This document shows, piece after piece, positions 1-52,959 of a stretch of 64,000 bases of DNA. The stretch spans positions 186,001 through 250,000 of the forward strand of contig NIVC01000449.1 of the NCBI GenBank assembly GCA_002269645.1. Reading direction: 5' to 3'. The notes under the pieces are model-generated. The model did not search any database. It saw only the letters and a program-made list of their open reading frames with translations, and had not been told where the DNA came from. Position 1 is the stretch's first letter. Each line of letters begins with the position of its first letter. Position numbers and translations under genes: made by a program. The DNA comes from Macrostomum lignano (taxonomy: Eukaryota).

Positions 1-450
1 GAAAGATAGAACTGCCAGAAGACTCAGACTAGGCATGGAGGTTCTGCCTCCCCTGCGACTCTCCGCCTCTCTTCCCATTCCTTCCCGAGTTCACGCAGAC
101 TCTGTTCACAGCCAGACTGTCGCAGCCTCTCTCCTCCCACCTGTACGTGAACTTCCGCTGCCTGAGCTGGAGTCTCCAAGCTGAGCTGCTCCGCAATCGC
201 GCACCTGCAATTAAACTGGATGATTGGAAGCGAGAGCTGGAAGAAGACCCAGACTTGGAGGAGCTGCTCACTCTGGCTCACTACAGCGACTGCCGCGAGC
301 ACGTGGAGCTCAGCCTGCAGCAGATAGAGATGATCGAGGAAGAGAGACGCGTCGCCATGGAGATGTAGGACGAGGAGAAGATCGGCTGGGTCAGGCAGAA
401 GCGGGAGAGACTGAAGAAGCGGCAGAAATACAGGCCATCCGGTAGATTTC
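1..450 (+). pseudogene. 3' end of a cGLR/Mab-21 paralog of gene B, disrupted by nonsense codons
   Basis: About 20-412 aligns almost base-for-base with 16300-16690 (DSDWAWRFCLPCDSPP...RQKR). In that frame TGG is replaced by TAG at 30-32 and CAG by TAG at 366-368. The 5' part lies outside the window. Confidence 0.8.
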
Positions 451-797: not shown

Positions 798-1887
798 CGT
801 TATCTTTTCTTCGCGGTTTAACAGTAAATTACTGAGAAGCCGTCTGCAACTGCTGACTTCATGCAGAGATGAAATTTTTTAAATTTGTTGTTAATGTCAG
901 TAGATTTTTATTATAAAACTTTTTTGTAATCCTATATACCAAAAATGAAATGTCTGTGTGTGTAGCTGTGAGATGTAGCTAACCATTTTTCTTTGAGGAA
1001 AAAGAATTTTATTCTAATAAACTCATGAGGATCCAACAGCTGCATACGTACCATCTGCACAAACTACATGTACTTCATTCAAACGAAAACCCTATTCGGA
1101 CAGATTTCGAAAATTGTGACACTATCACGACATGACAAAGCTGTGTTTTCACGGATTTTTTTTAGCTTAATAGAGTTTGAGATGGTCTTTATCCGTGGGA
1201 AATACTTAATAAGTGAGTCATTCAAGCAGCTCAAAATACAATGGAGCATTCGAGATACCGAAGTATGCACTGGTACAAGGGTACTTCCATGTACATGTAT
1301 TGCTGCCTTACTGCTGTCTAATTCTTCAATGAATGAAACGATGGAGTCACTGTTGTTTACCGCTTCAACTTAATATTACGAGTACAACGTCATTTAAAAA
1401 TTCTTATAGTCACAAAAGATTCAATGCGACGCAAAATCTATCTTATAATATAACTGATAAAGATATTTATTTTTAGCACAAGATTTGATTCATATCTTGC
1501 ACAAAGAGACTATTCTAGCTTCTGCTCTATGGAATTAAGCTTGTTCACAATGGTACAAACAGAAAAAAATGGTGATCAAACGGCTTCTCCATATGATTTC
1601 GTCTCTCTGTATGAGTCGATAGTTCAGTTGCGATAGATCAAAGCATGTAACCTACACACTGATACCTCGTATGCAATTACGAGTATATTTCGAGTATTGA
1701 AGCTTAAAATAAACAAAATTGCTGAGTGAAACAGGAGGAGAACCAAAATCATAGGATAAAAGAAAAAGCAAGGAAAGGCAGAAAAAAATTGCGAGGGCAA
1801 AACGCGCTGCTCAGACCATCGCGCACGCACGTAAAAGGCCAACCGCGCCCAGCACCCCACGCACCCCCACCCCCCACACGGGAGCAC

Positions 1888-2318
1888 GAGAAATGCCCGC
1901 AGACAAATTGCCCGCCGAGATTTGCCCGCAAGAGATTTGCCCGTGGAGATTTGCCCGCCGAGCTTTTCCCGCCGAGATTTGTCCGCGATGCTTTTTTATT
2001 GCAGCGCATTTGGCAGCTAGATTCTGTCTGCATTGCCCCCCCCCTCCCAGAAAATGCATTTGATATGCAGTTACTGTCAAAACGTTTTGATCGTGTACTC
2101 GTAAATCTCTTTATTAAGATTTACATGTACTAAGCATTGGGAATGCAATGCAGACAAATGGCCAAATGCGCTGCAATAAAAAAGCATCGCGGGCAAACCT
2201 CGGCGGGAAAAAACTCGGCGAGCAACTCACTCGCGGGCAAATCTCTTGCGGGCAAATCTCCACGGGCAAATCTCTTGCGGGCAAATCTCGGCGGGCAATT
2301 TGACTGCGGGAATTTCTC
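1888..2318. mobile_element. Foldback/MITE-like element with long imperfect inverted arms
   Basis: 1888-2036 is the reverse complement of about 2145-2318. Both arms are built from gcccgc(a/c)(a/g)agattt subrepeats. The spacer of about 108 bp contains an 8 bp hairpin gtaaatct/agatttac (2101-2124). cccccacacg occurs on both flanks (1871-1880 and 2329-2338). Confidence 0.65.
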
Positions 2319-2799
2319 ATGGACCCCCCCCCCACACGCCGGCACAAAGAACAGCCCGCGCAAGCACGCAAAAAGACGACCGTCCTGTCAGCTCAACGCG
2401 ATTACAGCGCCAGTGCCCCAGCACTGAAATCGCCAATTTTAACGCCGTAAAGAGTCAGACTTTTCAGTTGTAAGCTATCCATTGGTAGCACTGCCAACCG
2501 TGCTACGAAATTATGCAGATACGCTTTGAAAATTTAAACACAAAAGTTTCTCTCCCTTTGCAAGCTCGAGATTTTATCTGCCTTTGCAACGCTCTCCGAC
2601 GGCCAACGGCTGCATGGATTTGTTATCTTTTGCGCCATCTCCCTCTTCAGCTTTAAAGAGGCAAATCGAAATCAGCTTCAGGCTACCAGATGGAGGAGTG
2701 TCCTTTTAAGACAAACCTCCTTGCATTTCGCTAGCTAGTCAGTAAAAGCTAAGTCCAATCGAAGAAAAAAAGCTTTAACAAGCTGCAGACTGGACCGCA

Positions 2800-5700
2800 A
2801 TGAGTATGCTACCTGAGCTGAAGAGCGCCGCCATGGACGGCAGAGTCGGCAAGGTGCGGCAGTTTCTACGGAGCAGCGTCAGTCCGGACGTCGCTGACGA
2901 CCGGCAGAGGACGGCGCTGCACTGGGCAGCCGAGCGAGGCCAGTCCAGGGTGGCGAGGCTTCTTATCGAGGCCGGAGCTCAGCTGGACGCTCAGGACAGC
3001 AGCGGAGCGACCGCTCTGCACCTGGCCTCGATGCACGGTCACCGGGATGCGGTCCGGCTGCTGCTCGAGTCCGAGGCCGACACCAGCCTGGTGACGAAGT
3101 CCAGCTCCTCGGCGCTGCACCTCGCCTCGCGGAACGGCCACCTCGAAGTCGTGCAGCTGCTGAGCCGGCAGGCCGACTGCGATCAGCAGCTCGAAGACGG
3201 AGACTCGCCGGTGCACCTGGCTGCTCAGCTCGGGCAGCAGCTCGTGCTCGCTGCTCTGCTGCTGGCAGCCGCGGATCCGAGCGCCAGGAATGCGCGCGGC
3301 CAGACCCCGCTGCACTCCGCGGCTCTCCACGGCCAGCGGGCCGCCATTGAGCTGCTCGTTCGGGCGGGAGTTGCCGCCGACTCGTTGGCCAGCGACGGGT
3401 CGACTCCGCTGCACGCTGCGGCAGCGATGGGGCACGAGGCCACCGCCCAGACTCTGCTGCAGCTCGGCTGCGGGCTCGGCGACATTACAAAGGACGAGCT
3501 CAGCGCTGCTGCCGACCTTGCTGGTCGTTTTGGACATCACGAAATCCTGCATCTTCTGCTCTGCCGTGCGGATCACGTTAGTGGAATTCTACGGGAAGAG
3601 TCACGAAATGGTCTAGGCCAGATTCAAAGCGAGATAACTCGTAGCCAACACACAATTCAAATGCCTGACGAATATGTACGCGGGGAAAGGTAATGTACCT
3701 TACTCGTTCAGCTGCATACCAACCCCTCTGAAATTACCTGTGTTGTTTTTTTCAACTTTAGCATGCGAGACCCACTTATCAATATGCAACCTGGAGAAGA
3801 CGAACATTATGCTCATCATCGTGCAATCATTGATGAACGCGAAAGCAGCAATCAACTGCACCTGGCACTAAACAAGTCCGGTTTTGTCCTCGATCGTGTG
3901 AAACTGCAATCAGCATGCTCCGATGTTTTGCGACAAATTCTGATAAAACGACTCGATACTACTGAGTTCAGTGACTATCAAGTGCACATCGTTGGGAGCT
4001 ACAGTGAAGGCTGGTCCAACAGCTTGATTCGGCTGGACGGTAGAACTGACGCAGACTCAGACATCGATGTTTGCCTCATTGCCACAGGCATGCTGTTCCA
4101 TCTCAAAGGCACTTGTAGCTGCATCAACTTCTCATTTGGTGGGGAACGGCACGTGGAAGTGGAGTACGAAAATGGTCACATCTATTTGCCTGAGTCGCGT
4201 AAGAAAGCTTATATGTACAAGTAAGAGTTGTCATTGCATGCCTATAGGATATACAAAAGTGCCCCGATGCCTGCAATTTTCAGCTGCCAATCCGTCGCAG
4301 ACATGGAGAGGATGCAGCATGAGGCCCGCAGTCGATCTTGTGTGGGCGTTCCGCTGCTGTTGCTACCCTCCGGTGGCAGTCCTGGAGACAGGGTACAACA
4401 CAAATATTGCTCCATCAGTGCTGGCAGCTCTGAGGCAGGAGACGATCGACTCTCCGTGCCACCTGGTGTCAGCGGCTACCCCTGGCAAGGACGGACAGCA
4501 GCTGAGGGTCAGCACCACCTTCCTGGAGCGAAGGCTGCTCAGAAGCCTCACAACCGAGCAGGGACACGTGTTCGTGCTCATCAAGTTCATCATAAAGAAA
4601 CTGATTGCAGCTCGCACGAATGGGCTAAAGACTTACATAGCTAAAAACCTCATGTTCTACCTACTGGATGAAACACCTGTTGGTGATTGGGAGACCAACA
4701 AGCTGATTAGTCTTGCACGGAGAGCGCTACTGAAGCTGCTGGAGTGTTTGGGAGAAGTTTCGGACCCTGATAAGTGCATAAGACACTTCTTCATGAGAGA
4801 CGCCTGGGTATATCTGAAGAGACGTCACTCTGGAAAAGAGGCGATCGCACGGGTTGTGAGCAGTGTAGTCGATGAGCTGCCCCAGATTGCTCTGCGCTTC
4901 AAAGAAAGTTTACAACCGTTGGAAGAGGGCGAAGCGATGAGTTTTCATCCGTTTCTGATCTTGCCAGTGTTTAATCCAAGACCAGTGCCAATGTCTTCAA
5001 TGCTGCAGTTCCACGATGTGTATGACGCGATCCGGTTCCTGATACTACAGCTGGCCAACAGACATATCAACGGGGCAAACAAAAACGTCGAGTTGTTGAA
5101 GATAGCTCAGCGAATTCCAGACTTTGCTCGTTTTCCAAAACACTGTCTGACGGCGTTGATTCACATGAAGTTTGGCGAATGGTCTGCAGCATATTGGGCC
5201 TTGAAGTCCTGCCACTATCACCGGGTGAGCAAGGGTTTGACCAACAGGGGTGAGCCAGCAACAGATGCAGAGGCGCAGTTGGCTGTGTGGCAGCATCTGG
5301 AGAGCGTCAACTCAGTGTGGAAGGTCTTGATTCCGGTGGACGAGCCGCTGCTTTTGTATTTCCTTCCAACCAGACTCCGGAAGTGCTTCTCACTGACTTC
5401 GGGCCAATTCAACTGGTATTACATGAACTTCGATGCGCTGCTAAGAGGCCTCAGCATGTGGATGGATCATAGCAAGCCATTTGAGCTGTGGTTCGAAGAA
5501 GTTCTGCAAAGCAGGAAGCCGGATATTGCAGAGCTGCTCGTCACTTTCGAATTTTGTCGCGATGCTGACCTACTAGTTCGGCTGATTCAGAAGCACCGAA
5601 GGGACATCTGCGACCATCAGATGACAAGGCACAGGGTCAAAAAGCTGATGCAGCTGAGGGTGAGTCAGATGTGAAATACTCGTAGAATGGTATTGAAGTA

Positions 5701-6479
5701 TTCTGGTAAATGACACGTTCATTAAGGCAAAACAAAGACAAACCACTCCTGCACACATATGAACTCGTGGATACTTTACGCAGGCACACACTCCCACAGG
5801 GTGTACAGCGGTTTCCTCTTGTGGGTATGCATTGCATTACACAATAACCTTCGACCAATTTTCGGTAGCAAACCCCGAATGAATGTGGCCGCTCACGGAA
5901 CCCGACTTCGTTTTGGCATCGTCTCATCCGCCAAGTCCACCGCTGAATAATCTGCAGCTTCAGCTAACCAATAATCATATCTTTAACTTCTATGCATACT
6001 TTTTGCAGCCATCGTTGGCCAAAAAGAGCGTCGAAAGGACAGAGCGAGTTTTGGCTGGTGGAACCACAGACGGATACTCGAAACATGACAGATCGGCAAG
6101 GCCTTGCGCTGTTCAACTGCTCAAACTCTGCTGCACTCTGTCATTGCTGACCTACTTCGTGAAGCAGGCGAGGAATTGTGGACTGACCATTGGCAAGGAG
6201 TTACTCGTTGCGGCGGTCAGGGCTTTTGCTGCAGTGCAGCGGAGAGGAAGATACTTGGTTCGCGATTCCCTCAGTCTACGGATGGTGGTGCTGCACCATC
6301 TGCTGAGCTGGATTCTGTTCTGGTCTCTGTGTGCAACTGCCAATGTAAACTGGTTTACTGACATTGACCTGTGGCGTCTATTTCTCCTCCATCAGTTAGC
6401 AGCGATTCCAGCCTTTCTCATTTCCACTCTCGTAATATTTTTTAAAAGTGGGCGTGCTTCGCATTTGTTTAATAAATAG
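2800..6479 (+). CDS. Gene A: ankyrin-repeat - cGAS-like/Mab-21 nucleotidyltransferase (cGLR) - putative multi-TM tail. Exons 2800-3689, 3762-4198, 4284-5659, 6009-6479 (about 1057 aa; 905 aa if the last intron is not spliced, stop at 5674)
   Basis: About 8 ANK repeats (TALHxAA/TPLH..G). GT-AG introns 3690-3761 (phase 2), 4199-4283 (phase 1) and 5660-6008 (phase 0; GTGAGT donor, CTAAC at 5964, ttttgcAG acceptor) join four listed ORFs in frame. Mab-21/cGAS motifs: IVGSYSEGW, DSDIDV, VDLVWAF, LRVSTTFLERRLL, LKTYIAKNLMFY. The first three exons are well supported; the fourth less so. Confidence 0.85.
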
Positions 6480-11588: not shown

Positions 11589-14500
11589 ATGAGCCAAAAA
11601 GAAAGCGCCTACGTAGCCGTGAAGGCTGGAGACATCCAAGCACTGCAGCATCGTTTGCAGCTGTGGCAAAGTGATACAGACAAAACACACTTTTGTAGAA
11701 CATGTTTGCCAATTGCAGCCAAAGCGAGACAGTCAGAAATGGTTAAGTTTCTCGTGCAGACAGTCACTGAAAAGACAAACAGAAATCATTGCTGCATAGC
11801 TACAGCGAAAGAAGCTGCAGAAAATGGTCAATTAGAAGTGGTGAAGTTTCTGGTGCAGACAATCACTGACCAAATAAGCAGAGATTATTACTGCATAGAT
11901 GCAGCGAAAGAAGCTGCAGACAATGGTCAGTTAGAACTAGTGAAGTTTTTGTTGCATACAGTCACTGCCCTAAAAAGCAGAGATCAGTGCTGCATAGATG
12001 CAGCGAAAGAAGTTGCAGACAATGGTCAGTTAGAAGTGGTAAAGTTTCTGTTGGAGACAGTCACTGACCAAAAAACCGGAGTGCAGAGCTACATTGATGC
12101 AGCAAATGAACTTGTAGACAATGGTTCGTTAAAAATGTTGAAGTTTCTTTTGCATAAATTCACTGACAGTGACGAAACAAACAGAGATCAGTGCTGCATA
12201 GGTGCAGGGAATGAAGTTGCAGACATTGGTCAGTTAGAAATAGTGAAGTTTCTGTTGCATAAAGTCACTGACAATGACGAAGCAAACAGTGATCAGTGCT
12301 GCATGGATGTAGCGAAAGAAGCTGCAGACAATGGCCAGTTAGAAGTGGTGAAGTTTCTGGTGCACACAGTCACTGACCAAAAAATCAGAGATCAGTGCTG
12401 CATGGATGCAGCGAAAGAAGCTGCAGACAATGGCCAGTTAGAAGTGGTGAAGTTTCTGGTGCAGACAATCGCTGGCCAAACGAAAAGAGATCAGTGCTGC
12501 ACTAAGACAGCGAAATCTGCTGCAGACAGAGGTCACTGGCATGTGGCAAAGTTTTTAGTACAGACAATCGCAGACAAAACAAAAAGAGATCAGTGCTGTA
12601 TGGAGGCAGCGACATCTACTGCATACAACGGTGAGTTAGAATTGGTAAAGTTTCTGGTGCTGACAGTCAGTGACCAAATGAAAAGAGATCAGTGCTGCAT
12701 AAAGGCAGCGCAACCTGCTGCATTTAATGGTCAGTTACACGTGGTGAAGTTTCTGGTGCAGACAGTCGCTGACCAAACAAAAAGAGATCAGTGCTGCATG
12801 CAGGTAGCGGAATCTGCTACAATGAATGATCACTTAGAAGTCGTGAAGTTCCTAATCTCCTGCCTCTCAAGTGCGGATAAGAGAGCAGATTTGCGTTTCC
12901 AATGCGCAATCCTGGCTTGCTCTCGTCTTTTCGAAGATGTCGTCGCCTACCTCGGCCTCGAGCCCGACTGGCTTTTCCAATCCAGCACCATCCTCAGCTT
13001 CACTGCAGCAATGGCCATCGAAGGCAGGAACTCTGTTCTCACCGACACCCTCTCTCGAATGCAGCCAGCTCACATCACACAGCTGCTTTGTCTCTCCATC
13101 TCTCAAAGACACGTCGCTCTTGCTGTTACACTGATCAATGATGAGCGAGTCAGCACAGAGCATGTCGATCTGCCAGACAGCACTGGAGCCACTGCTCTCA
13201 TGCTGGCAGCTGATGCAGGTCATCACGAGCTCATTGAGAAACTCATCGATCTCGGTGCGTCAGTGCGTGTTGAAGACAGTCAGGGTCGGACTGCTCTGTC
13301 ACGAGCGTGCAAAGCCGGTCACGTGCGAGCAGCCAAGGCTCTAATGGACAGAGGAGCGGATGCGAGTCATCGAGCCGGTCAGGGTCTGACGTGTGCGCAG
13401 GTGGCACAGCGATTTGAGCAGCGGCAGGTGCTGCGGCTGCTGGATACCAGTGGAGCGGGGTGAGTGAGGCGAGAATATCGCGAATCTTTTCAGTACTCTA
13501 TGGGAATAGTGGTTTAATAAATAAACGAGTTCGAGTTCATATATTATTTCCGATGCTGGTCCTCTGCCTTTGTTCGTCGCTTCTTTCGCTTCTTAGCTGT
13601 TAGATTTTTTTTGGTTTTTCAAATCTAACGTTAAGAACATCAGACTCAACTGCTTTGAGACCCTTGGCTTTCCTTCTTGCCTTCCAGAAATCCGGAGGCC
13701 CGACAGGCAGCCGCTCACCGCTTGGATTCGGACCTTCATCGGTGAGTCTGACCTGTTCAGCTTTCACCGCCGCATTGCGCCTTCCAACAGGCTGGCAGCT
13801 TAGGGAAGAAATTGCAGCAAAACTTAGGAGGGTTGAGATTGGGTTGAGCTGAGTGACTCTCAGCTCTCCTGCTTGAGATGCCAGTCTGAGTGCTGCAGCA
13901 GCTGCACTCTCAGCTCTCCTGCTTGAGATGCCAGTCTGAGTGCTGCAGCAGCTGCACTCTCAGCTCTCCTGCTTGAGATGCCAGTCTGAGTGCTGCAGCA
14001 GCTGCACTTTCAGCTCTCCTGTTTGAAATGCCAGTCTGGTGCAGCAGCTGCACTCTCAGCTCTCCTGCTTGAGATGCCAGTCTGAGTGCTGCAGCAGCTG
14101 CACTCTCAGCTCTCCTGCTTAAGATGCCAGTCTGAGTGCTGCAGCAGCTGCACTCTCAGCTCTCCTGCTTGAGATGCCAGTCTGAGTGCTGCAGCAGCTG
14201 CACTCTCAGCTCTCCTGCTTGAGATGCCAGTCTGAGTGCTGCAGCAGCTGCACTTTCAGCTCTCCTGTTTGAAATGCCAGTCTGGTGCAGCAGCTGCACT
14301 CTCAGCTCTCCTGCTTGAGATGCCAGTCTGAGTGCTGCAGCAGCTGCACTCTCAGCTCTCCTGCTTAAGATGCCAGTCTGAGTGCTGCAGCAGCTGCACT
14401 CTCAGCTCTCCTGCTTGAGATGCCAGTCTGAGTGCTGCAGCAGCTGCACTCTCAGCTCTCCTGCTTGTTCTGTCCATTCAACTCTGAGCAAGTCACCCAC

Positions 14501-17064
14501 ACGCATCTCGGATCATTCCAGGCTCTCAGACGACTCCCAGCAAGACTGTCGTCTCAGCGAGGAGCTGCATCGACTGCTCAGCGATGCGGGATTCACCGAG
14601 CAGAGAGCGGAGTGTCAGCAGAGACTGGCTGACTGGCTGCAACAAGTGGCTCGAGTCCTCACACAGGATGACTATCGCAGGGAGATGACAGGCAGCTACG
14701 CAGAGGGCTGGGCCAACAGTCTGGTGCAAGTGAACGGCAGGACAGCTGCAGACTCGGACATTGACTGGACTGTGCTGCTGGTTGCTTGGCAGCAGTTCCA
14801 TCTGGAAGGTGGTTGCAAAAGAAGATCTGTTTCCTGCGACGACGCCACTCGGCTGCCGGTCAAGGAGGGCCACGCACAGGTGGCAGTGGGAGCAGGTAAG
14901 TAAGACTGGTTTCATCATCAGAATGCTGAGATCCGCATGAATCATGGAGGCCATTAACTTTGCTCAACTAACTTTAAATTCGCAACCGAGTGGCGCCCAG
15001 CCTCCAGCTGCTTCTGTGACTGCGAATGTCGGCTTGGGTGCTGAAACAAGCGGCAGGCGAAATTGAAAAGAAAACTCTGATGCCGACTGGCTGAGCCGGG
15101 CCATTGGGTTTTGAATTCACAGGCTCGAAAGAGAACTCAAAAGAGGTGCTCAGATAAAGGGAACTGAACCTTGTTTGTACCCCAGTCCAGCAGTTTCACA
15201 ACAACTCTTTTTTCAATAGCAAAACGCGACTCTCCGCTCACTACGCTCTGCAGGCAGCCAACCTGCAGTGACAGCCACGGCGTGCGGTGTGCGGCCTGCA
15301 CAGGACACGTGCCATGCGATCGAGTGCTGCAGCAGCTTCTGTGGGGACAGAATTAGAAAACTGCTTAGAGACAGTCCTGATACAGTTCACCTCGTTCGAG
15401 CGACCAGACCGAGCTCGACCGACGAGCTCAGAGTGAGCTTCAGCTTCCAGGAGAAAGACATCATTAGACGGCTGAGCACAGTCCAGGGCCAGCTGTTCAC
15501 ACTCATTAAGTTTATCTTTAAGAGACACTTGCCGCTCACTCTGGACACACCTGGACTCAAGACCTACCATGCAAAGACTCTGCTCTTCACAATGCTGGAG
15601 AAGCATGGCACAGATCCGAAAGCTGAAGCATGGTGGATCCCGCTTGGAATTCATGGCGCTACTAAAGCTGAAGCTTGGCAGCCCCACAATCTGATCACTC
15701 TACTCAAGGAGTCTCTCGACATGATGCTGAGCTTTATCGACTCGAGCAGCTCGCCCGATGAGTGCATGCCGCACTTCTTCATGCCCGACGCTCCGCTCTA
15801 CTTCAAGAACGCTGGAATCGGCGGCGACTTCGACAACACGAAGGCGAGGGTTCGAGACCGACTTTGTGAGCTGAGAAGCGACATCGGCGGAGTGGTCGAG
15901 CAGCTGAGGAGACTCGTGAGACCTCTGCAGTCAGAGAAGTTCTACTTTCACCCGTTCACTCTGCTGCCTCTGACAGGACCGCCTGCTGTCACGAAGATCG
16001 GGCAAAGAAGCTATTCCAATTTCGAAGATGTGTACAGTGTGGTGCACCAGTGTGTGAGCGAGCTGCAGTCGGAATCGAGCGACAGAGACACCCTGATGAG
16101 GCAGCTCAGTCTTTTGTATCGGCATTGGCTGCAATGGTGCAAGTGCGCTGCCCTGTGCATGACCGCCATGGCGCATTTGAAGTTCGGAGAATCTGGGGAG
16201 GCTGTGAGACTCGCGATGAAGCTTCAGAGACATCAGGTTGAGTCAGGATTGAAGCCACAGGATATTCAAACATCGTGTCAGCAAACTAAACTCCCACAAG
16301 ACTCAGACTGGGCGTGGAGGTTCTGCCTCCCCTGCGACTCTCCGCCTCGCTTTCCATTCCTTCCCGAGTTCACGCAGACTCTGTTCACAGCCAGACTGTC
16401 GCAGCCTCTCTCCTCCCACCTGTACGTGAACTTCCGCTGCCTGAGCTGGAGTCTCCAAGCTGAGCTGCTCCGCAATCGCGCACCTGGAATTAAACTAGAG
16501 GTTTGGAAGCAAGAGCTGAAAGAAGACCCGGACTTGGAGGAGCTGCTCACTCTGGCTCACTACAGCGACTGCCGCGAGCACGTGGAGCTCAGTCTGCAGC
16601 AGATGGAGATGATCGAGAAAGAGAGACGCGTCGCCATGGAGACGCAGGACGAGGAGAAGATCGGCTGGGTCAGGCAGAAGCGGTGGCGAGTTTTGAACCG
16701 CAGCGGCAGCGACAGCGAAGTTCACCGCAGCAGGGAAGATGAGGAGCGGAGGCTGTGGGCGAGGGCGAGGCTGCGGCGAGACGGGGCCGACTTGGGGCGC
16801 CTGGTTGCCATGGAAACTGCAGCGGAGCAGAGAGACAGCTGGACTCATGCCAAGCTCAGTCGGATTAGACTGATGAAGCTGGACAGACTTGATGCAGCAT
16901 CCGGACTACTTAATGTCAAATCGCGAAACCAAGATCGGAAAAGAACTTTCGTTTTATTTTTGTTTTGCTTTGTTCTGCTTTGGCTTGTCTATAATGTTTT
17001 TCAAAACGGGCACATTGAGAGCTGGAGAGACTTCATGAATTTCATATATTTTAATTTTGTTTAA
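11589..17064 (+). CDS. Gene B: atypical ankyrin-like array + canonical ANK - cGAS-like/Mab-21 nucleotidyltransferase (cGLR) - hydrophobic C-terminus. Exons 11589-13459, 13688-13741, 14522-14895, 15254-17064 (about 1369 aa)
   Basis: 12 x 33-35 aa repeats (DQCC..AAK.AA.NGQLEVVKFL) plus about 3 canonical ANK repeats. Introns 13460-13687 and 13742-14521 (both phase 2) and 14896-15253 (phase 1) are GT-AG and keep frame. Motifs: MTGSYAEGW, DSDIDW, RPAQDTCHAI, LRVSFSFQEKDII, LKTYHAKTLLF. The phase-1 intron sits at the same position as in gene A. Confidence 0.85.
13855..14465. repeat. 50-bp minisatellite, about 12 copies, inside intron 2 of gene B
   Basis: Unit cactctcagctctcctgcttgagatgccagtctgagtgctgcagcagctg; two units are 46-bp variants. 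Confidence 0.95.
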
Positions 17065-17144
17065 TTAAACCGCTTATTCTGATGACAAGGAAAACTAAAG
17101 CAACGTACATGTATATACAGGACGTCGACGTGACACTCACGTTT

Positions 17145-25149: not shown

Positions 25150-52959
<27,810 letters not shown>

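What the first reader, a model, noticed from the sequence alone, without database searches (positions are those of the whole stretch)
5660..6479. Hidden fourth exon would append a 3-4 helix membrane domain to the cGLR of gene A
Seen: the apparent stop of the cGLR ORF (5674) lies 12 nt after a perfect AGG|GTGAGT donor (5660). A CTAAC branch-like motif (5964) and a ttttgcAG acceptor (6008) put the hydrophobic ORF 5883-6479 exactly in frame (phase 0: ...LMQLR|PSLAKK...). There is no AATAAA/ATTAAA in 5674-6008, but AATAAA sits at 6471 next to the new stop. The added 156 aa contain hydrophobic runs AVQLLKLCCTLSLLTYFV, MVVLHHLLSWILFWSLCATANV and LFLLHQLAAIPAFLISTLVIFF. Inference: an ANK-cGLR-TM single polypeptide, either a membrane-anchored sensor or a synthase fused to its own membrane effector, conceptually like CBASS TM effectors or the STING TM region. 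No homology to either is claimed.
Basis: partly seen in the sequence, partly recalled or inferred. Interest (0 to 1): 0.8.

Follow-up and report, generated by a model that had tools for sequence, protein, structure and literature searches.

The report
Membrane-tail exon of flatworm cGLR
A flatworm (Macrostomum) gene for a cGAS-like immune sensor very probably has a fourth, final exon that adds a 156-residue helical, hydrophobic tail, which may tether the enzyme to a membrane; several sister genes carry unrelated hydrophobic tails, and we found no description of this for the family.

Summary

The exon is very likely real. A stop-free run of 156 codons has p≈2.5e-4. Codon usage looks coding only in the predicted frame. 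The spliced protein (1057 aa) aligns without a break across the junction to Macrostomum lignano paralogue models P0002/P0004 and P0001.

The enzyme part is a cGAS/Mab21-fold nucleotidyltransferase with an intact catalytic motif.

The membrane claim is only partly supported. Two C-terminal helices (993-1014 and 1025-1046) are more hydrophobic than anything in the soluble parts of the family, are not amphipathic, and have positive flanks. They are marginal on two other scales, and no paralogue model reaches them.

Independent context helps. Gene B in this window and three RNA-seq-derived paralogues (P0045, P0052, P0059) carry strong, non-homologous C-terminal hydrophobic segments. In gene B, P0045 and P0052 these lie in the same reading frame as the enzyme domain with no splice.

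There is no similarity to CBASS effectors or STING, so the "own effector" idea is unsupported. Splicing has not been shown by RNA.

The parts
2800..3689 (+). Gene A exon 1: start codon and ankyrin-repeat domain
   Evidence: Pfam Ank_2 E=2e-45. The first 200 residues are 96-100% identical to paralogue model P0001, and the N-terminal ANK region is also near-identical in P0002, P0004 and P0005 outside gaps in those models. The donor is AG|GTAATG at 3690.
3762..4198 (+). Gene A exon 2: N-lobe of the nucleotidyltransferase, with GS (aa 375-376) and DID (aa 397-399)
   Evidence: The frame is restored by the acceptor tttag|C at 3761. The motif columns are nearly invariant in a 20-sequence alignment.
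4284..5659 (+). Gene A exon 3: rest of the cGAS/Mab21-like domain plus a C-terminal helical extension. Intron 2 is 4199-4283.
   Evidence: This splice gives ...GHIYLPESPANPSQTW..., matching P0001 and P0005. AF2 pLDDT is about 90, and Foldseek hits MAB21L1, cGAS and cGLR structures. The Pfam Mab-21_C hit scores 22.6 bits, below the 24.1 cut-off.
5660..6008 (+). Intron 3 (349 nt): donor GTGAGT at 5660-5665, retained-intron stop TGA at 5672-5674, CTAAC at 5964-5968, polypyrimidine tract plus AG at 5996-6008
   Evidence: Read from the sequence. The codon-usage score is negative in all three frames. It is the best of three in-frame acceptors by pyrimidine content.
6009..6479 (+). Exon 4: 156 codons plus TAG. 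It encodes the C-terminal helical tail, residues 902-1057 of the long form.
   Evidence: Stop-free run p=2.5e-4. Coding-like codon usage in both halves. Residues 1-71 align to the tails of P0002 and P0004 at 37% identity, contiguous with the upstream alignment.
6105..6161 (+). Tail helix H1 (CAVQLLKLCCTLSLLTYFV, aa 934-952): moderately hydrophobic, conserved in P0002/P0004 and followed by basic residues
   Evidence: WW-octanol -5.9, KD 1.71, Eisenberg <H> 0.46 with moment 0.12. It aligns to SSLVKLLTCFSLSLLISLA+KRSRRRG in P0002.
6282..6347 (+). Tail helix H3 (MVVLHHLLSWILFWSLCATANV, aa 993-1014): candidate transmembrane helix
   Evidence: WW-octanol -13.2, below the minimum (-10.65) of 25,259 windows from soluble family sequence. 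<H> 0.56, moment 0.06, with a +4 flank before it. KD 1.5-1.6 and Hessa sum +2.5 are marginal.
6378..6443 (+). Tail helix H4 (LFLLHQLAAIPAFLISTLVIFF, aa 1025-1046): candidate transmembrane helix
   Evidence: WW-octanol -10.7, KD 1.94-1.99, <H> 0.67. The H3-H4 loop has net charge -1 and the C-terminal flank +2.
6471..6476 (+). AATAAA poly(A) signal abutting the exon-4 stop codon
   Evidence: It is the only + strand A[AT]TAAA between 2181 and 9539. Gene B has the same layout: stop at 17062-17064 and ATTAAA at 17064-17069.
16945..17001 (+). Context: gene B (paralogous ANK-cGLR, last ORF 15268-17064) carries a strong C-terminal hydrophobic helix, TFVLFLFCFVLLWLVYNVF, in the same continuous ORF as its Mab21 domain
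   Evidence: KD 2.42, Hessa sum -2.2, WW -18.4. Gene B is 27% identical to gene A and 85% identical to BOX15_Mlig016402g1.

Best explanation
Gene A is a four-exon gene of a Macrostomum (lignano-like) flatworm. It encodes a 1057-aa protein made of an N-terminal ankyrin-repeat domain, a catalytically competent cGAS-like (Mab21-fold) nucleotidyltransferase, and a C-terminal tail supplied entirely by exon 4.

Shown by the evidence: the sequence features are present, the exon looks coding, and paralogue protein models continue across the same junction.

Inferred: the tail consists of a linker helix, a conserved moderately hydrophobic helix with a basic flank (H1), an amphipathic helix (H2) and a terminal pair of hydrophobic helices (H3-H4). 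H3-H4 insert as a hairpin, so the ANK-cGLR module and the extreme C-terminus both face the cytosol. The tail therefore acts as a membrane anchor. It places a nucleotide-second-messenger-producing sensor on an organelle surface. It is not an effector.

Speculative: because the donor is followed four codons later by a stop, retaining intron 3 would give a soluble 905-aa form. Splicing could then switch the protein between soluble and anchored forms.
For: Splice signals, phase and the unique poly(A) signal are as described. The 156-codon open frame has p=2.5e-4, and coding-type codon usage appears only in the predicted frame, in both halves. BLASTP of the spliced protein aligns residues 1-987 (of the provisional 1069-aa model) to P0002 1-965, and 1-930 to P0001 1-919, running straight through the junction. 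LMQLRPSLAKKSVERT aligns with LMQRLPSLAEKSSQRT without a gap.

AF2 gives pLDDT about 90 for the enzyme part. Foldseek top hits are MAB21L1, cGAS, Cv-cGLR1, Sp-cGLR1 and MB21D2 (E about 1e-6, TM 0.5-0.59). The GS, DxD and D columns are nearly invariant.

Tail helices H3 and H4 are more hydrophobic on the WW-octanol scale than any of 25,259 windows of soluble family sequence. They have low hydrophobic moments, and the flanking charges of +4 / -1 / +2 obey the positive-inside rule.

Family context: gene B in this window, and P0045 and P0052, carry strong C-terminal hydrophobic segments in the same continuous ORF or exon as the Mab21 domain. P0059 has about three such segments. The BOX15 models behind P0045, P0052 and P0059 derive from RNA-seq (PMC5730564).
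Against: No RNA evidence for the 5659/6009 junction could be obtained. The exon-4 peptide has no homologue outside the family.

Paralogue models cover only the first ~74 tail residues. P0002/P0004 stop after H2 and P0001 stops after ~40 residues, so H3-H4 are unsupported by conservation. Those paralogue models are predictions from an older assembly, not independent proof of splicing.

H1, H3 and H4 contain K, HH and HQ. Their Kyte-Doolittle scores are 1.5-2.0, and an ankyrin helix in the same protein scores 1.71. Their position-independent Hessa sums are +2.5 to +3.1 kcal/mol. AF2 confidence for the tail is low, with pLDDT 44-64 in context and 62.6 alone.

In the gene-B clade, close paralogues differ in whether the hydrophobic tail is present. 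Such tails could therefore be evolutionary accidents of shifting stop codons.
Confidence: 0.6

Rival explanations
1. Exon 4 is coding and spliced as proposed, but the tail is a soluble or peripheral helical module, for example an oligomerisation or autoinhibitory bundle packing on the C-terminal extension of the cGLR. It is not membrane-embedded.
For: Each hydrophobic helix contains polar or charged residues. Kyte-Doolittle is at threshold and the Hessa sums are positive. H2 is clearly amphipathic, with moment 0.46. AF2 predicts helices that could form a bundle. The parts conserved in paralogues are the linker and H1, not H3-H4.
Against: H3 and H4 have almost no hydrophobic moment (0.06-0.19), so they lack a polar face for a soluble bundle. 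They exceed every soluble window of the family on the WW scale. The charge distribution fits a hairpin. Sister genes carry unambiguous hydrophobic anchors at the same end.
Confidence: 0.22
2. The protein ends at 5674 (905 aa, ...LMQLRVSQM*). The region 5675-6479 is 3' UTR, and its open frame and splice-like signals are fortuitous.
For: The stop lies only 4 codons past the donor. Paralogue model P0005 ends exactly at the junction (...ELMQR). More distant paralogues such as P0012 end at about this position with no downstream exon. No transcript data were available.
Against: The open frame has p=2.5e-4. Codon usage is coding-like in one frame only, and GC content drops only after 6479. The peptide similarity to P0002, P0004 and P0001 continues in frame past the junction at a divergence where neutral DNA would have lost the frame. 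Without the splice, the gene would need an ~800-nt 3' UTR, whereas gene B's poly(A) signal overlaps its stop.
Confidence: 0.12
3. The hydrophobic ORF belongs to a separate downstream gene, starting at ATG 5883 or trans-spliced at 6008, or to a transposable element.
For: The ORF has its own ATG at 5883. M. lignano uses spliced-leader trans-splicing and polycistronic precursors (PMC5730564).
Against: Paralogue proteins join the same peptide directly to the cGLR. There is no other copy in the window and no protein homologue in 5.8 billion or 1.8 billion sequence libraries, so it is not a known mobile-element protein. From acceptor 6008 the first in-frame Met is residue 92 of the tail, yet the region before it scores as coding.
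Confidence: 0.03
4. The tail is an effector: a membrane-disrupting or channel-forming module controlled by the fused synthase, as the first reader suggested by analogy with CBASS TM effectors or STING.
For: Only the architecture (enzyme plus several hydrophobic helices) and the recurrence of such tails in paralogues.
Against: No PADLOC, Pfam or PDB match. There is no nucleotide-binding domain between the enzyme and the helices. Tails of close paralogues vary from 0 to ~3 helices and are not homologous, which fits interchangeable anchors better than a conserved effector.
Confidence: 0.03

Closest known systems
ANK-cGLR fusions of animals (Li et al. 2023, cGLR survey; PMC9980059)
   Same: An N-terminal ankyrin-repeat module is fused to a cGAS-like nucleotidyltransferase core. 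The paper lists ANK, TPR, death-domain and tandem-cGLR architectures. Its Table S3 shows that five M. lignano proteins were screened, including BOX15_Mlig016402g1, which is 85% identical to gene B.
   Different: No transmembrane or membrane-anchor architecture is listed there, and 'transmembrane' occurs only for STING. Here a hydrophobic C-terminal tail is appended. [quoted passage not shown]
OAS1 p46 versus p42 isoforms (human; from my own knowledge, not checked here)
   Same: A nucleotidyltransferase-fold innate sensor whose alternative terminal exon adds a membrane-targeting signal, so splicing decides between soluble and endomembrane-bound forms. This is the closest analogue for how gene A may work.
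   Different: OAS1 p46 uses a four-residue CaaX prenylation box, not helices, and OAS belongs to a different branch of the fold. Alternative use of intron 3 in gene A is an inference only.
MiD49/MiD51 (MIEF2/MIEF1), membrane-anchored Mab21-fold proteins
   Same: A cGAS/Mab21-type fold tethered to an organelle membrane with the domain facing the cytosol. They appear among the Foldseek hits (E 1e-3 to 3e-3).
   Different: Their anchor is a single N-terminal helix, and they lack the catalytic residues and act as Drp1 receptors (own knowledge). Gene A keeps GS/DxD/D, and its anchor is C-terminal.
Tail-anchored and hairpin-anchored membrane proteins
   Same: There is no N-terminal signal sequence. 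Hydrophobic helices sit at the extreme C-terminus with basic flanks. Gene B and P0045 look like classical single-helix tail anchors.
   Different: Gene A has two to three moderately hydrophobic helices rather than one strong one, and insertion has not been shown.
CBASS transmembrane effectors and the STING transmembrane domain
   Same: Hydrophobic helices within a cyclic-nucleotide signalling pathway.
   Different: There is no sequence or structure similarity and no ligand-binding domain. In those systems the membrane part is on the receptor or effector, not on the synthase.

Membership tests
cGLR (cGAS-like receptor, Mab21-type nucleotidyltransferase) | Bilobed cGAS/Mab21 nucleotidyltransferase fold | tested here: met
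   The AF2 model has pLDDT about 90 over the domain. Foldseek PDB top hits are MAB21L1, human and mouse cGAS, Cv-cGLR1, Sp-cGLR1 and MB21D2, with E 4e-7 to 1e-5 and TM (target) 0.5-0.59. This is a predicted structure, not a solved one.
cGLR (cGAS-like receptor, Mab21-type nucleotidyltransferase) | Catalytic motif hG[GS]...[DE]h[DE]... plus a third acidic residue | tested here: met
   VGSYSEGW (G375, S376), DSDIDV (D397, D399) and AVDLVWAF (D460) in the 1057-aa numbering. The columns are nearly invariant among 20 family members.
cGLR (cGAS-like receptor, Mab21-type nucleotidyltransferase) | Significant match to Pfam Mab-21 / Mab-21_C models or to solved cGAS/cGLR sequences | tested here: inconclusive
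   Mab-21_C scores E=1.2e-4 and 22.6 bits, below the 24.1-bit cut-off. Paralogues P0045 and P0052 pass at 24.9 and 24.6 bits. A single-sequence phmmer search against PDB sequences finds no cGAS.
cGLR (cGAS-like receptor, Mab21-type nucleotidyltransferase) | Ligand-stimulated synthesis of a cyclic di- or oligonucleotide | not testable with these tools
   This needs a biochemical assay. Li et al. screened related M. lignano constructs but do not discuss them in the main text.
C-terminally anchored integral membrane protein (tail anchor or helical hairpin) | At least one C-terminal segment of about 19-25 residues hydrophobic enough to span a bilayer | tested here: inconclusive
   Met on WW-octanol (H3 -13.2 and H4 -10.7, against a soluble-family minimum of -10.65) and on Eisenberg <H> 0.56-0.67 with low moment. 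Borderline on Kyte-Doolittle (1.5-1.99). Not met on position-independent Hessa sums (+2.5 to +3.1). The scale values were taken from memory. No trained predictor (DeepTMHMM, TMHMM) was available.
C-terminally anchored integral membrane protein (tail anchor or helical hairpin) | Positive-inside charge distribution and absence of an N-terminal signal peptide | tested here: met
   Net charge is +4 before H3, -1 in the H3-H4 loop and +2 after H4. The N-terminus, MSMLPELKSAAMDGRV, is hydrophilic and begins the ankyrin domain.
C-terminally anchored integral membrane protein (tail anchor or helical hairpin) | Demonstrated membrane integration | not testable with these tools
   This needs fractionation, carbonate extraction or imaging.
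CBASS transmembrane effectors / STING | Homology to known effector or STING families, or presence of a cyclic-nucleotide-binding domain next to the helices | tested here: not met
   PADLOC gives 0 families for the tail. Pfam gives only DUF4017 at E=0.13. Foldseek PDB on the tail model gives a best E of 1.4. The exhaustive representative search found only a spurious repeat protein.
Terminal exon shared with paralogues (same exon in sister genes) | Paralogues join a homologous peptide at the same junction | tested here: met
   P0002, P0004 and P0001 continue ...LMQRLPSLAEKSSQRT... and ...LMQESQSLAERSFRRT... at the position of LMQLR|PSLAKKSVERT. This holds only for the first ~40-74 residues. The paralogue DNA could not be retrieved.

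The most novel reading that the evidence does not exclude
Macrostomum has evolved a class of membrane-resident cGAS-like receptors. Within one expanded ANK-cGLR family, C-terminal anchors of unrelated sequence have been gained repeatedly: the hairpin in gene A, single helices in gene B and P0045, one or two helices in P0052 and about three in P0059. These place nucleotide-second-messenger synthases on organelle surfaces. In gene A, splicing or retention of the last intron chooses between the anchored and the soluble sensor. This would be a cGLR counterpart of the OAS1 p46/p42 switch, and a way of localising pattern recognition not so far described for cGLRs.
Probability: 0.3. Interest if true: 0.7.

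Novelty: new variant of a known kind. Interest (0 to 1): 0.5.

Why it matters
cGLRs are treated as soluble cytosolic sensors. In the 2023 family survey read here, the recorded domain fusions are ankyrin, TPR, death domains and tandem cores (PMC9980059).

If gene A and its sister genes are truly anchored through C-terminal helices, then where the second messenger is made becomes a variable of the pathway. It could be made next to ER-resident receptors, or on organelles that pathogens remodel. This flatworm family would offer natural anchored and soluble pairs to test that idea.

The finding also matters for annotation. The ORF-based protein of 905 aa would miss 152 residues. Recombinant screens that use only the core domain, as was done for M. 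lignano constructs, would miss any regulation by the tail.

If the tails turn out to be neutral by-products of shifting stop codons, that would be a useful caution about hydrophobic C-termini in fast-evolving gene families.

Tried and rejected
1. Homology searches with the 156-aa tail. The word-indexed search found nothing at E<=0.01. The exhaustive HMMER search of 1.84 billion representatives gave one hit, P0029, a repetitive artefact matching 'HDRSxRxC'.

2. Transcript or locus retrieval. P0001, P0002 and the 198-aa ORF are not on record, so no paralogue DNA was available for dN/dS and no RNA contigs could be examined.

3. A search for a hidden tail exon downstream of the distant paralogue P0012 (L001). 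There is no adjacent donor and only noise ORFs. The exon is confined to the gene-A subfamily.

4. A profile search of PDB sequences with the full alignment was swamped by ankyrin repeats. The single-sequence search gave no cGAS hit. The fold assignment therefore rests on AF2 and Foldseek.

5. My first gene model used the acceptor at 4247 and gave 1069 aa. The paralogue alignment showed that the true acceptor is 4283, giving 1057 aa. The first AF2 run carried the wrong 12 residues, which lay in the low-confidence stretch between residues 148 and 170.

6. AF2 of the tail alone gave pLDDT 62.6, and Foldseek gave no match better than E=1.4.

7. PADLOC gave no hits for the tail, for the enzyme parts of genes A and B, or for P0059.

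8. Literature searches for membrane-anchored cGLRs, or for Macrostomum cGAS/STING, found nothing specific. One search failed.

9. Whether M. lignano has STING could not be checked, because the protein searches were exhausted.
Full report
**What is in the sequence.** The cGLR reading frame runs ...CTG AGG | GTG AGT CAG ATG TGA. A consensus donor GTGAGT starts at 5660, and the stop is at 5672-5674. CTAAC lies at 5964-5968. The acceptor is ctttttgcAG, ending at 6008. Exon 4 begins at 6009 in phase 0 and gives ...KKLMQLR|PSLAKKSVERT.... It stays open for 156 codons to the TAG at 6477-6479.

On the + strand the only AATAAA/ATTAAA between 2181 and 9539 is AATAAA at 6471-6476, touching the new stop. 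Two other in-frame acceptors exist at 5957 and 5963, but their pyrimidine tracts are poorer.

**Is it more than chance?** A 156-codon stop-free run after a fixed acceptor has p=2.5e-4 under local composition. Random 64-kb sequences of this composition hold 0.1 open stretches of >=198 codons.

A codon-usage log-odds trained on other coding parts of the window gives +0.159 bits/codon for exon 4 in the predicted frame. The first half scores +0.185 and the second half +0.133, and the other two frames are negative. Exons 1-3 score +0.19 to +0.24. Intron 3 scores -0.25 to -0.36 depending on frame, and flanking non-coding DNA scores at most -0.067 in its best frame. GC content falls from about 0.5 to about 0.37 immediately after 6479.

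**Gene model and organism.** All relatives of the enzyme part come from Macrostomum lignano. They are ankyrin-Mab21 proteins, at best 61% identical to gene A. Gene B (11589-17064) is 85-87% identical to BOX15 proteins. The window therefore comes from M. lignano or a very close relative.

My first model gave 1069 aa. Alignment with P0001 and P0005 (...GHIKWPGSPSNPSQTW...) showed that intron 2 is 4199-4283. The corrected exons are 2800-3689, 3762-4198, 4284-5659 and 6009-6479.

**Identity of the enzyme part.** Pfam gives only a sub-threshold Mab-21_C hit of 22.6 bits against a cut-off of 24.1. Sequence search of PDB chains finds no cGAS.

An AlphaFold model built with 19 relatives is confident over the domain, at pLDDT about 90. 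Foldseek places it with MAB21L1, human and mouse cGAS, the oyster and coral cGLR1 structures and MB21D2 (E 4e-7 to 1e-5, target TM-score 0.5-0.59). The membrane-anchored MiD49 and MiD51 appear further down the list.

The catalytic signature is intact: VGSYSEGW, DSDIDV and AVDLVWAF, which are G375/S376, D397/D399 and D460. These columns are nearly invariant in the family. The 2023 cGLR survey included five M. lignano proteins in its recombinant screen, among them the closest database relative of gene B. It lists ankyrin fusions as a known architecture.

**Evidence that exon 4 is joined to the cGLR.** The tail alone has no detectable homologue in either large protein library. However, the closest paralogue models continue past the junction with alignable sequence:

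- P0002 and P0004 read ...ELMQRLPSLAEKSSQRTVQALAS...SSLVKLLTCFSLSLLISLAKRSRRRGFRAVSEAFLEAAMRKRA.
- P0001 reads ...QLMQESQSLAERSFRRTARALPG....

BLASTP of the spliced gene A protein aligns end to end with P0002, up to tail residue 74, in one segment through the junction. There is no gap at the joint. P0005 ends exactly at the junction, as a retained-intron reading would.

These UniProt-only models are predictions, so they do not prove splicing. Still, the tail is only 37% identical between them and gene A. Two lineages keeping the same frame open after the same joint at that divergence is what a coding exon predicts and what neutral DNA does not. I put the probability that exon 4 is a real, in-frame terminal coding exon at about 0.8.

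**Is the tail a membrane domain?** AlphaFold predicts a linker helix continuing from exon 3 and then four long helices, all at low confidence. pLDDT is 44-64 in context and 62.6 for the tail alone. Foldseek finds nothing for the tail, with a best E of 1.4.

Simple hydropathy measures disagree:

- Kyte-Doolittle 19-residue means are 1.71 (H1), 1.5-1.6 (H3) and 1.94-1.99 (H4). This is at the usual threshold, and an ankyrin helix in the same protein also scores 1.71.
- Position-independent Hessa sums are +2.5 to +3.1 kcal/mol, which is unfavourable.
- On the Wimley-White octanol scale, H3 (-13.2) and H4 (-10.7) exceed every one of 25,259 windows from the soluble parts of the family, whose minimum is -10.65. 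H1 (-5.9) lies in the top 0.3%.
- H3 and H4 have Eisenberg mean hydrophobicity 0.56-0.67 with almost no hydrophobic moment. H2 is a typical amphipathic helix.
- Net charges are +4 before H3, -1 in the short NVNWFTDID loop and +2 after H4.

This pattern is what a hairpin with both ends in the cytosol would show. No paralogue model reaches H3-H4. The scale values came from memory, and no trained predictor was available. I rate membrane insertion at about 0.55-0.6, given that the exon is translated.

**Family context.** Gene B, in the same window, ends with ...RNQDRKRTFVLFLFCFVLLWLVYNVFQNG.... This lies in the same continuous ORF as its Mab21 domain (KD 2.42, Hessa -2.2, WW -18.4), and its stop overlaps ATTAAA.

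Of the 66 family proteins retrieved, exactly three have strong hydrophobic segments, and all of these lie near the C-terminus. P0045 has ILALHFLIVVVLIVIVIFV at the extreme end. P0052 has one or two helices. P0059 has about three.

In P0045 and P0052 the hydrophobic tail and the C-terminal half of the enzyme lie in one exon. In P0059 the hydrophobic region contains a canonical intron. These GenBank models derive from an RNA-seq-guided transcriptome (PMC5730564).

None of these tails resembles another or gene A's. Close relatives of gene B lack its helix: P0031 ends ...RGRKRKAESD, and the fragment at window 1-422 has an early stop. Hydrophobic C-termini are therefore recurrent but labile in this family. 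That fits repeated selection for anchoring. It also fits accidents of stop-codon drift into T-rich sequence, although gene A's exon 4 is not T-rich overall, at 28% T.

**Mechanism.** The best-supported reading is a membrane-tethered ANK-cGLR. The ankyrin repeats and the active nucleotidyltransferase face the cytosol, held at an organelle surface by the exon-4 tail. The tail is an anchor, not an effector. It has no match to CBASS effector models, STING or any solved structure, and there is no nucleotide-binding domain between the enzyme and the helices.

Retaining intron 3 stops translation after four codons, so the gene could make a soluble 905-aa form as well. This switch is speculative. It would parallel the human OAS1 p46/p42 isoforms (own knowledge).

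**Novelty.** ANK-cGLR fusions are known. A C-terminal hydrophobic anchor on a cGLR is absent from the architectures listed in the 2023 survey, and no paper describing one was found in the library searched. Membrane-anchored Mab21-fold proteins do exist (MiD49/51), but they have an N-terminal anchor and no catalytic residues.

I class the finding as a new variant of a known kind, of moderate interest. It is well supported as an annotation correction. It is plausible but unproven as a membrane anchor. It is unsupported as a fused effector.

Noticed in passing
window 15268-17064 (TM-like helix 16945-17001): Gene B, a second ANK-cGLR gene, ends in a strongly hydrophobic helix (TFVLFLFCFVLLWLVYNVF). 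The helix is in the same ORF as its Mab21 domain, and the stop overlaps an ATTAAA signal. It looks like a classical tail anchor. Close database relatives (P0030-P0037) lack it.
   Followed up: partly
window 1-422: This is the 3' end of a third cGLR gene. It is 95% identical in DNA to gene B 16289-16683, but has an in-frame stop (…RRVAMEM*). Homology ends abruptly at 404/16683, so it is a truncated or differently tailed copy.
   Followed up: partly
window 2800-3450: The first ~200 residues of gene A's ankyrin domain are 96-100% identical to paralogue model P0001, and the same ANK region is near-identical in P0002, P0004 and P0005 apart from gaps in those models. The enzyme part is only ~55-60% identical. 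This is a mosaic that suggests gene conversion or recent swapping of the ANK exon.
   Followed up: partly
window 1880-2326: A large foldback lies about 475 bp upstream of gene A's start codon. Its arms are 1880-2014 and 2161-2326, 94-96% complementary, and are built partly of 14-15-bp GCGGGCAAATCTC repeats. It may be a MITE-like element or a regulatory palindrome.
   Followed up: no
window 11730-12799: Gene B's first exon contains 10.7 tandem copies of a 99-bp (33-aa) unit (…QLEVVKFLVQTVTDQ..RDQCCI.AAKEAADNG). This is an ankyrin-length repeat that Pfam recognises as ANK only at its C-terminal end.
   Followed up: no
window 13856-14467: A 50-bp tandem repeat (12 copies, 94% matches) runs into the start of the ORF 14382-14903, which encodes gene B's GS/DxD catalytic motif. 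The exon boundaries of gene B here are unresolved.
   Followed up: no
window 17000-64000: The rest of the window consists largely of tandem arrays. They include (TCTA)n at 31653-34932, (TGTC)n and (CTGT)n blocks, a 22-bp repeat spanning 38214-45897, a purine-rich array at 28882-30699, and many 22-55-bp minisatellites. Several arrays are open in all three frames for ~550-600 codons, which explains most of the 'long ORFs' in the window.
   Followed up: partly
L002 4001-6755 (P0059, BOX15_Mlig002844g1): This is a Mab21-like paralogue with about three C-terminal hydrophobic helices, and a canonical intron lies inside that region. Its catalytic motif looks degenerate (…GKDSIKW… where relatives have DSDIDW), so it may be an inactive, membrane-bound family member.
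   Followed up: partly
proteins P0009, P0011, P0013, P0022, P0032 (M. lignano paralogues): Several paralogues begin with short hydrophobic or amphipathic N-termini, for example MFSNLLSAFFQSIAVVFMQ, MQLAVGVLLKLALSALMQ, MRFLEWLLNFVGAFCMPVF and MLLISIIKTALELLVKLL. These may be a different, N-terminal way of associating with membranes.
   Followed up: no
proteins P0003, P0038: Some database models carry two Mab21 cores in one polypeptide. These are either true tandem-cGLR fusions, as listed in the 2023 survey, or mis-joined neighbouring genes from tandem arrays like the one in this window.
   Followed up: no
protein P0050 (JGI source, 467 aa, contig 3238 bp): This is the only non-M. lignano hit to gene B, at 46% identity. 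It comes from a JGI environmental assembly, which suggests a related flatworm in a metagenome sample.
   Followed up: no
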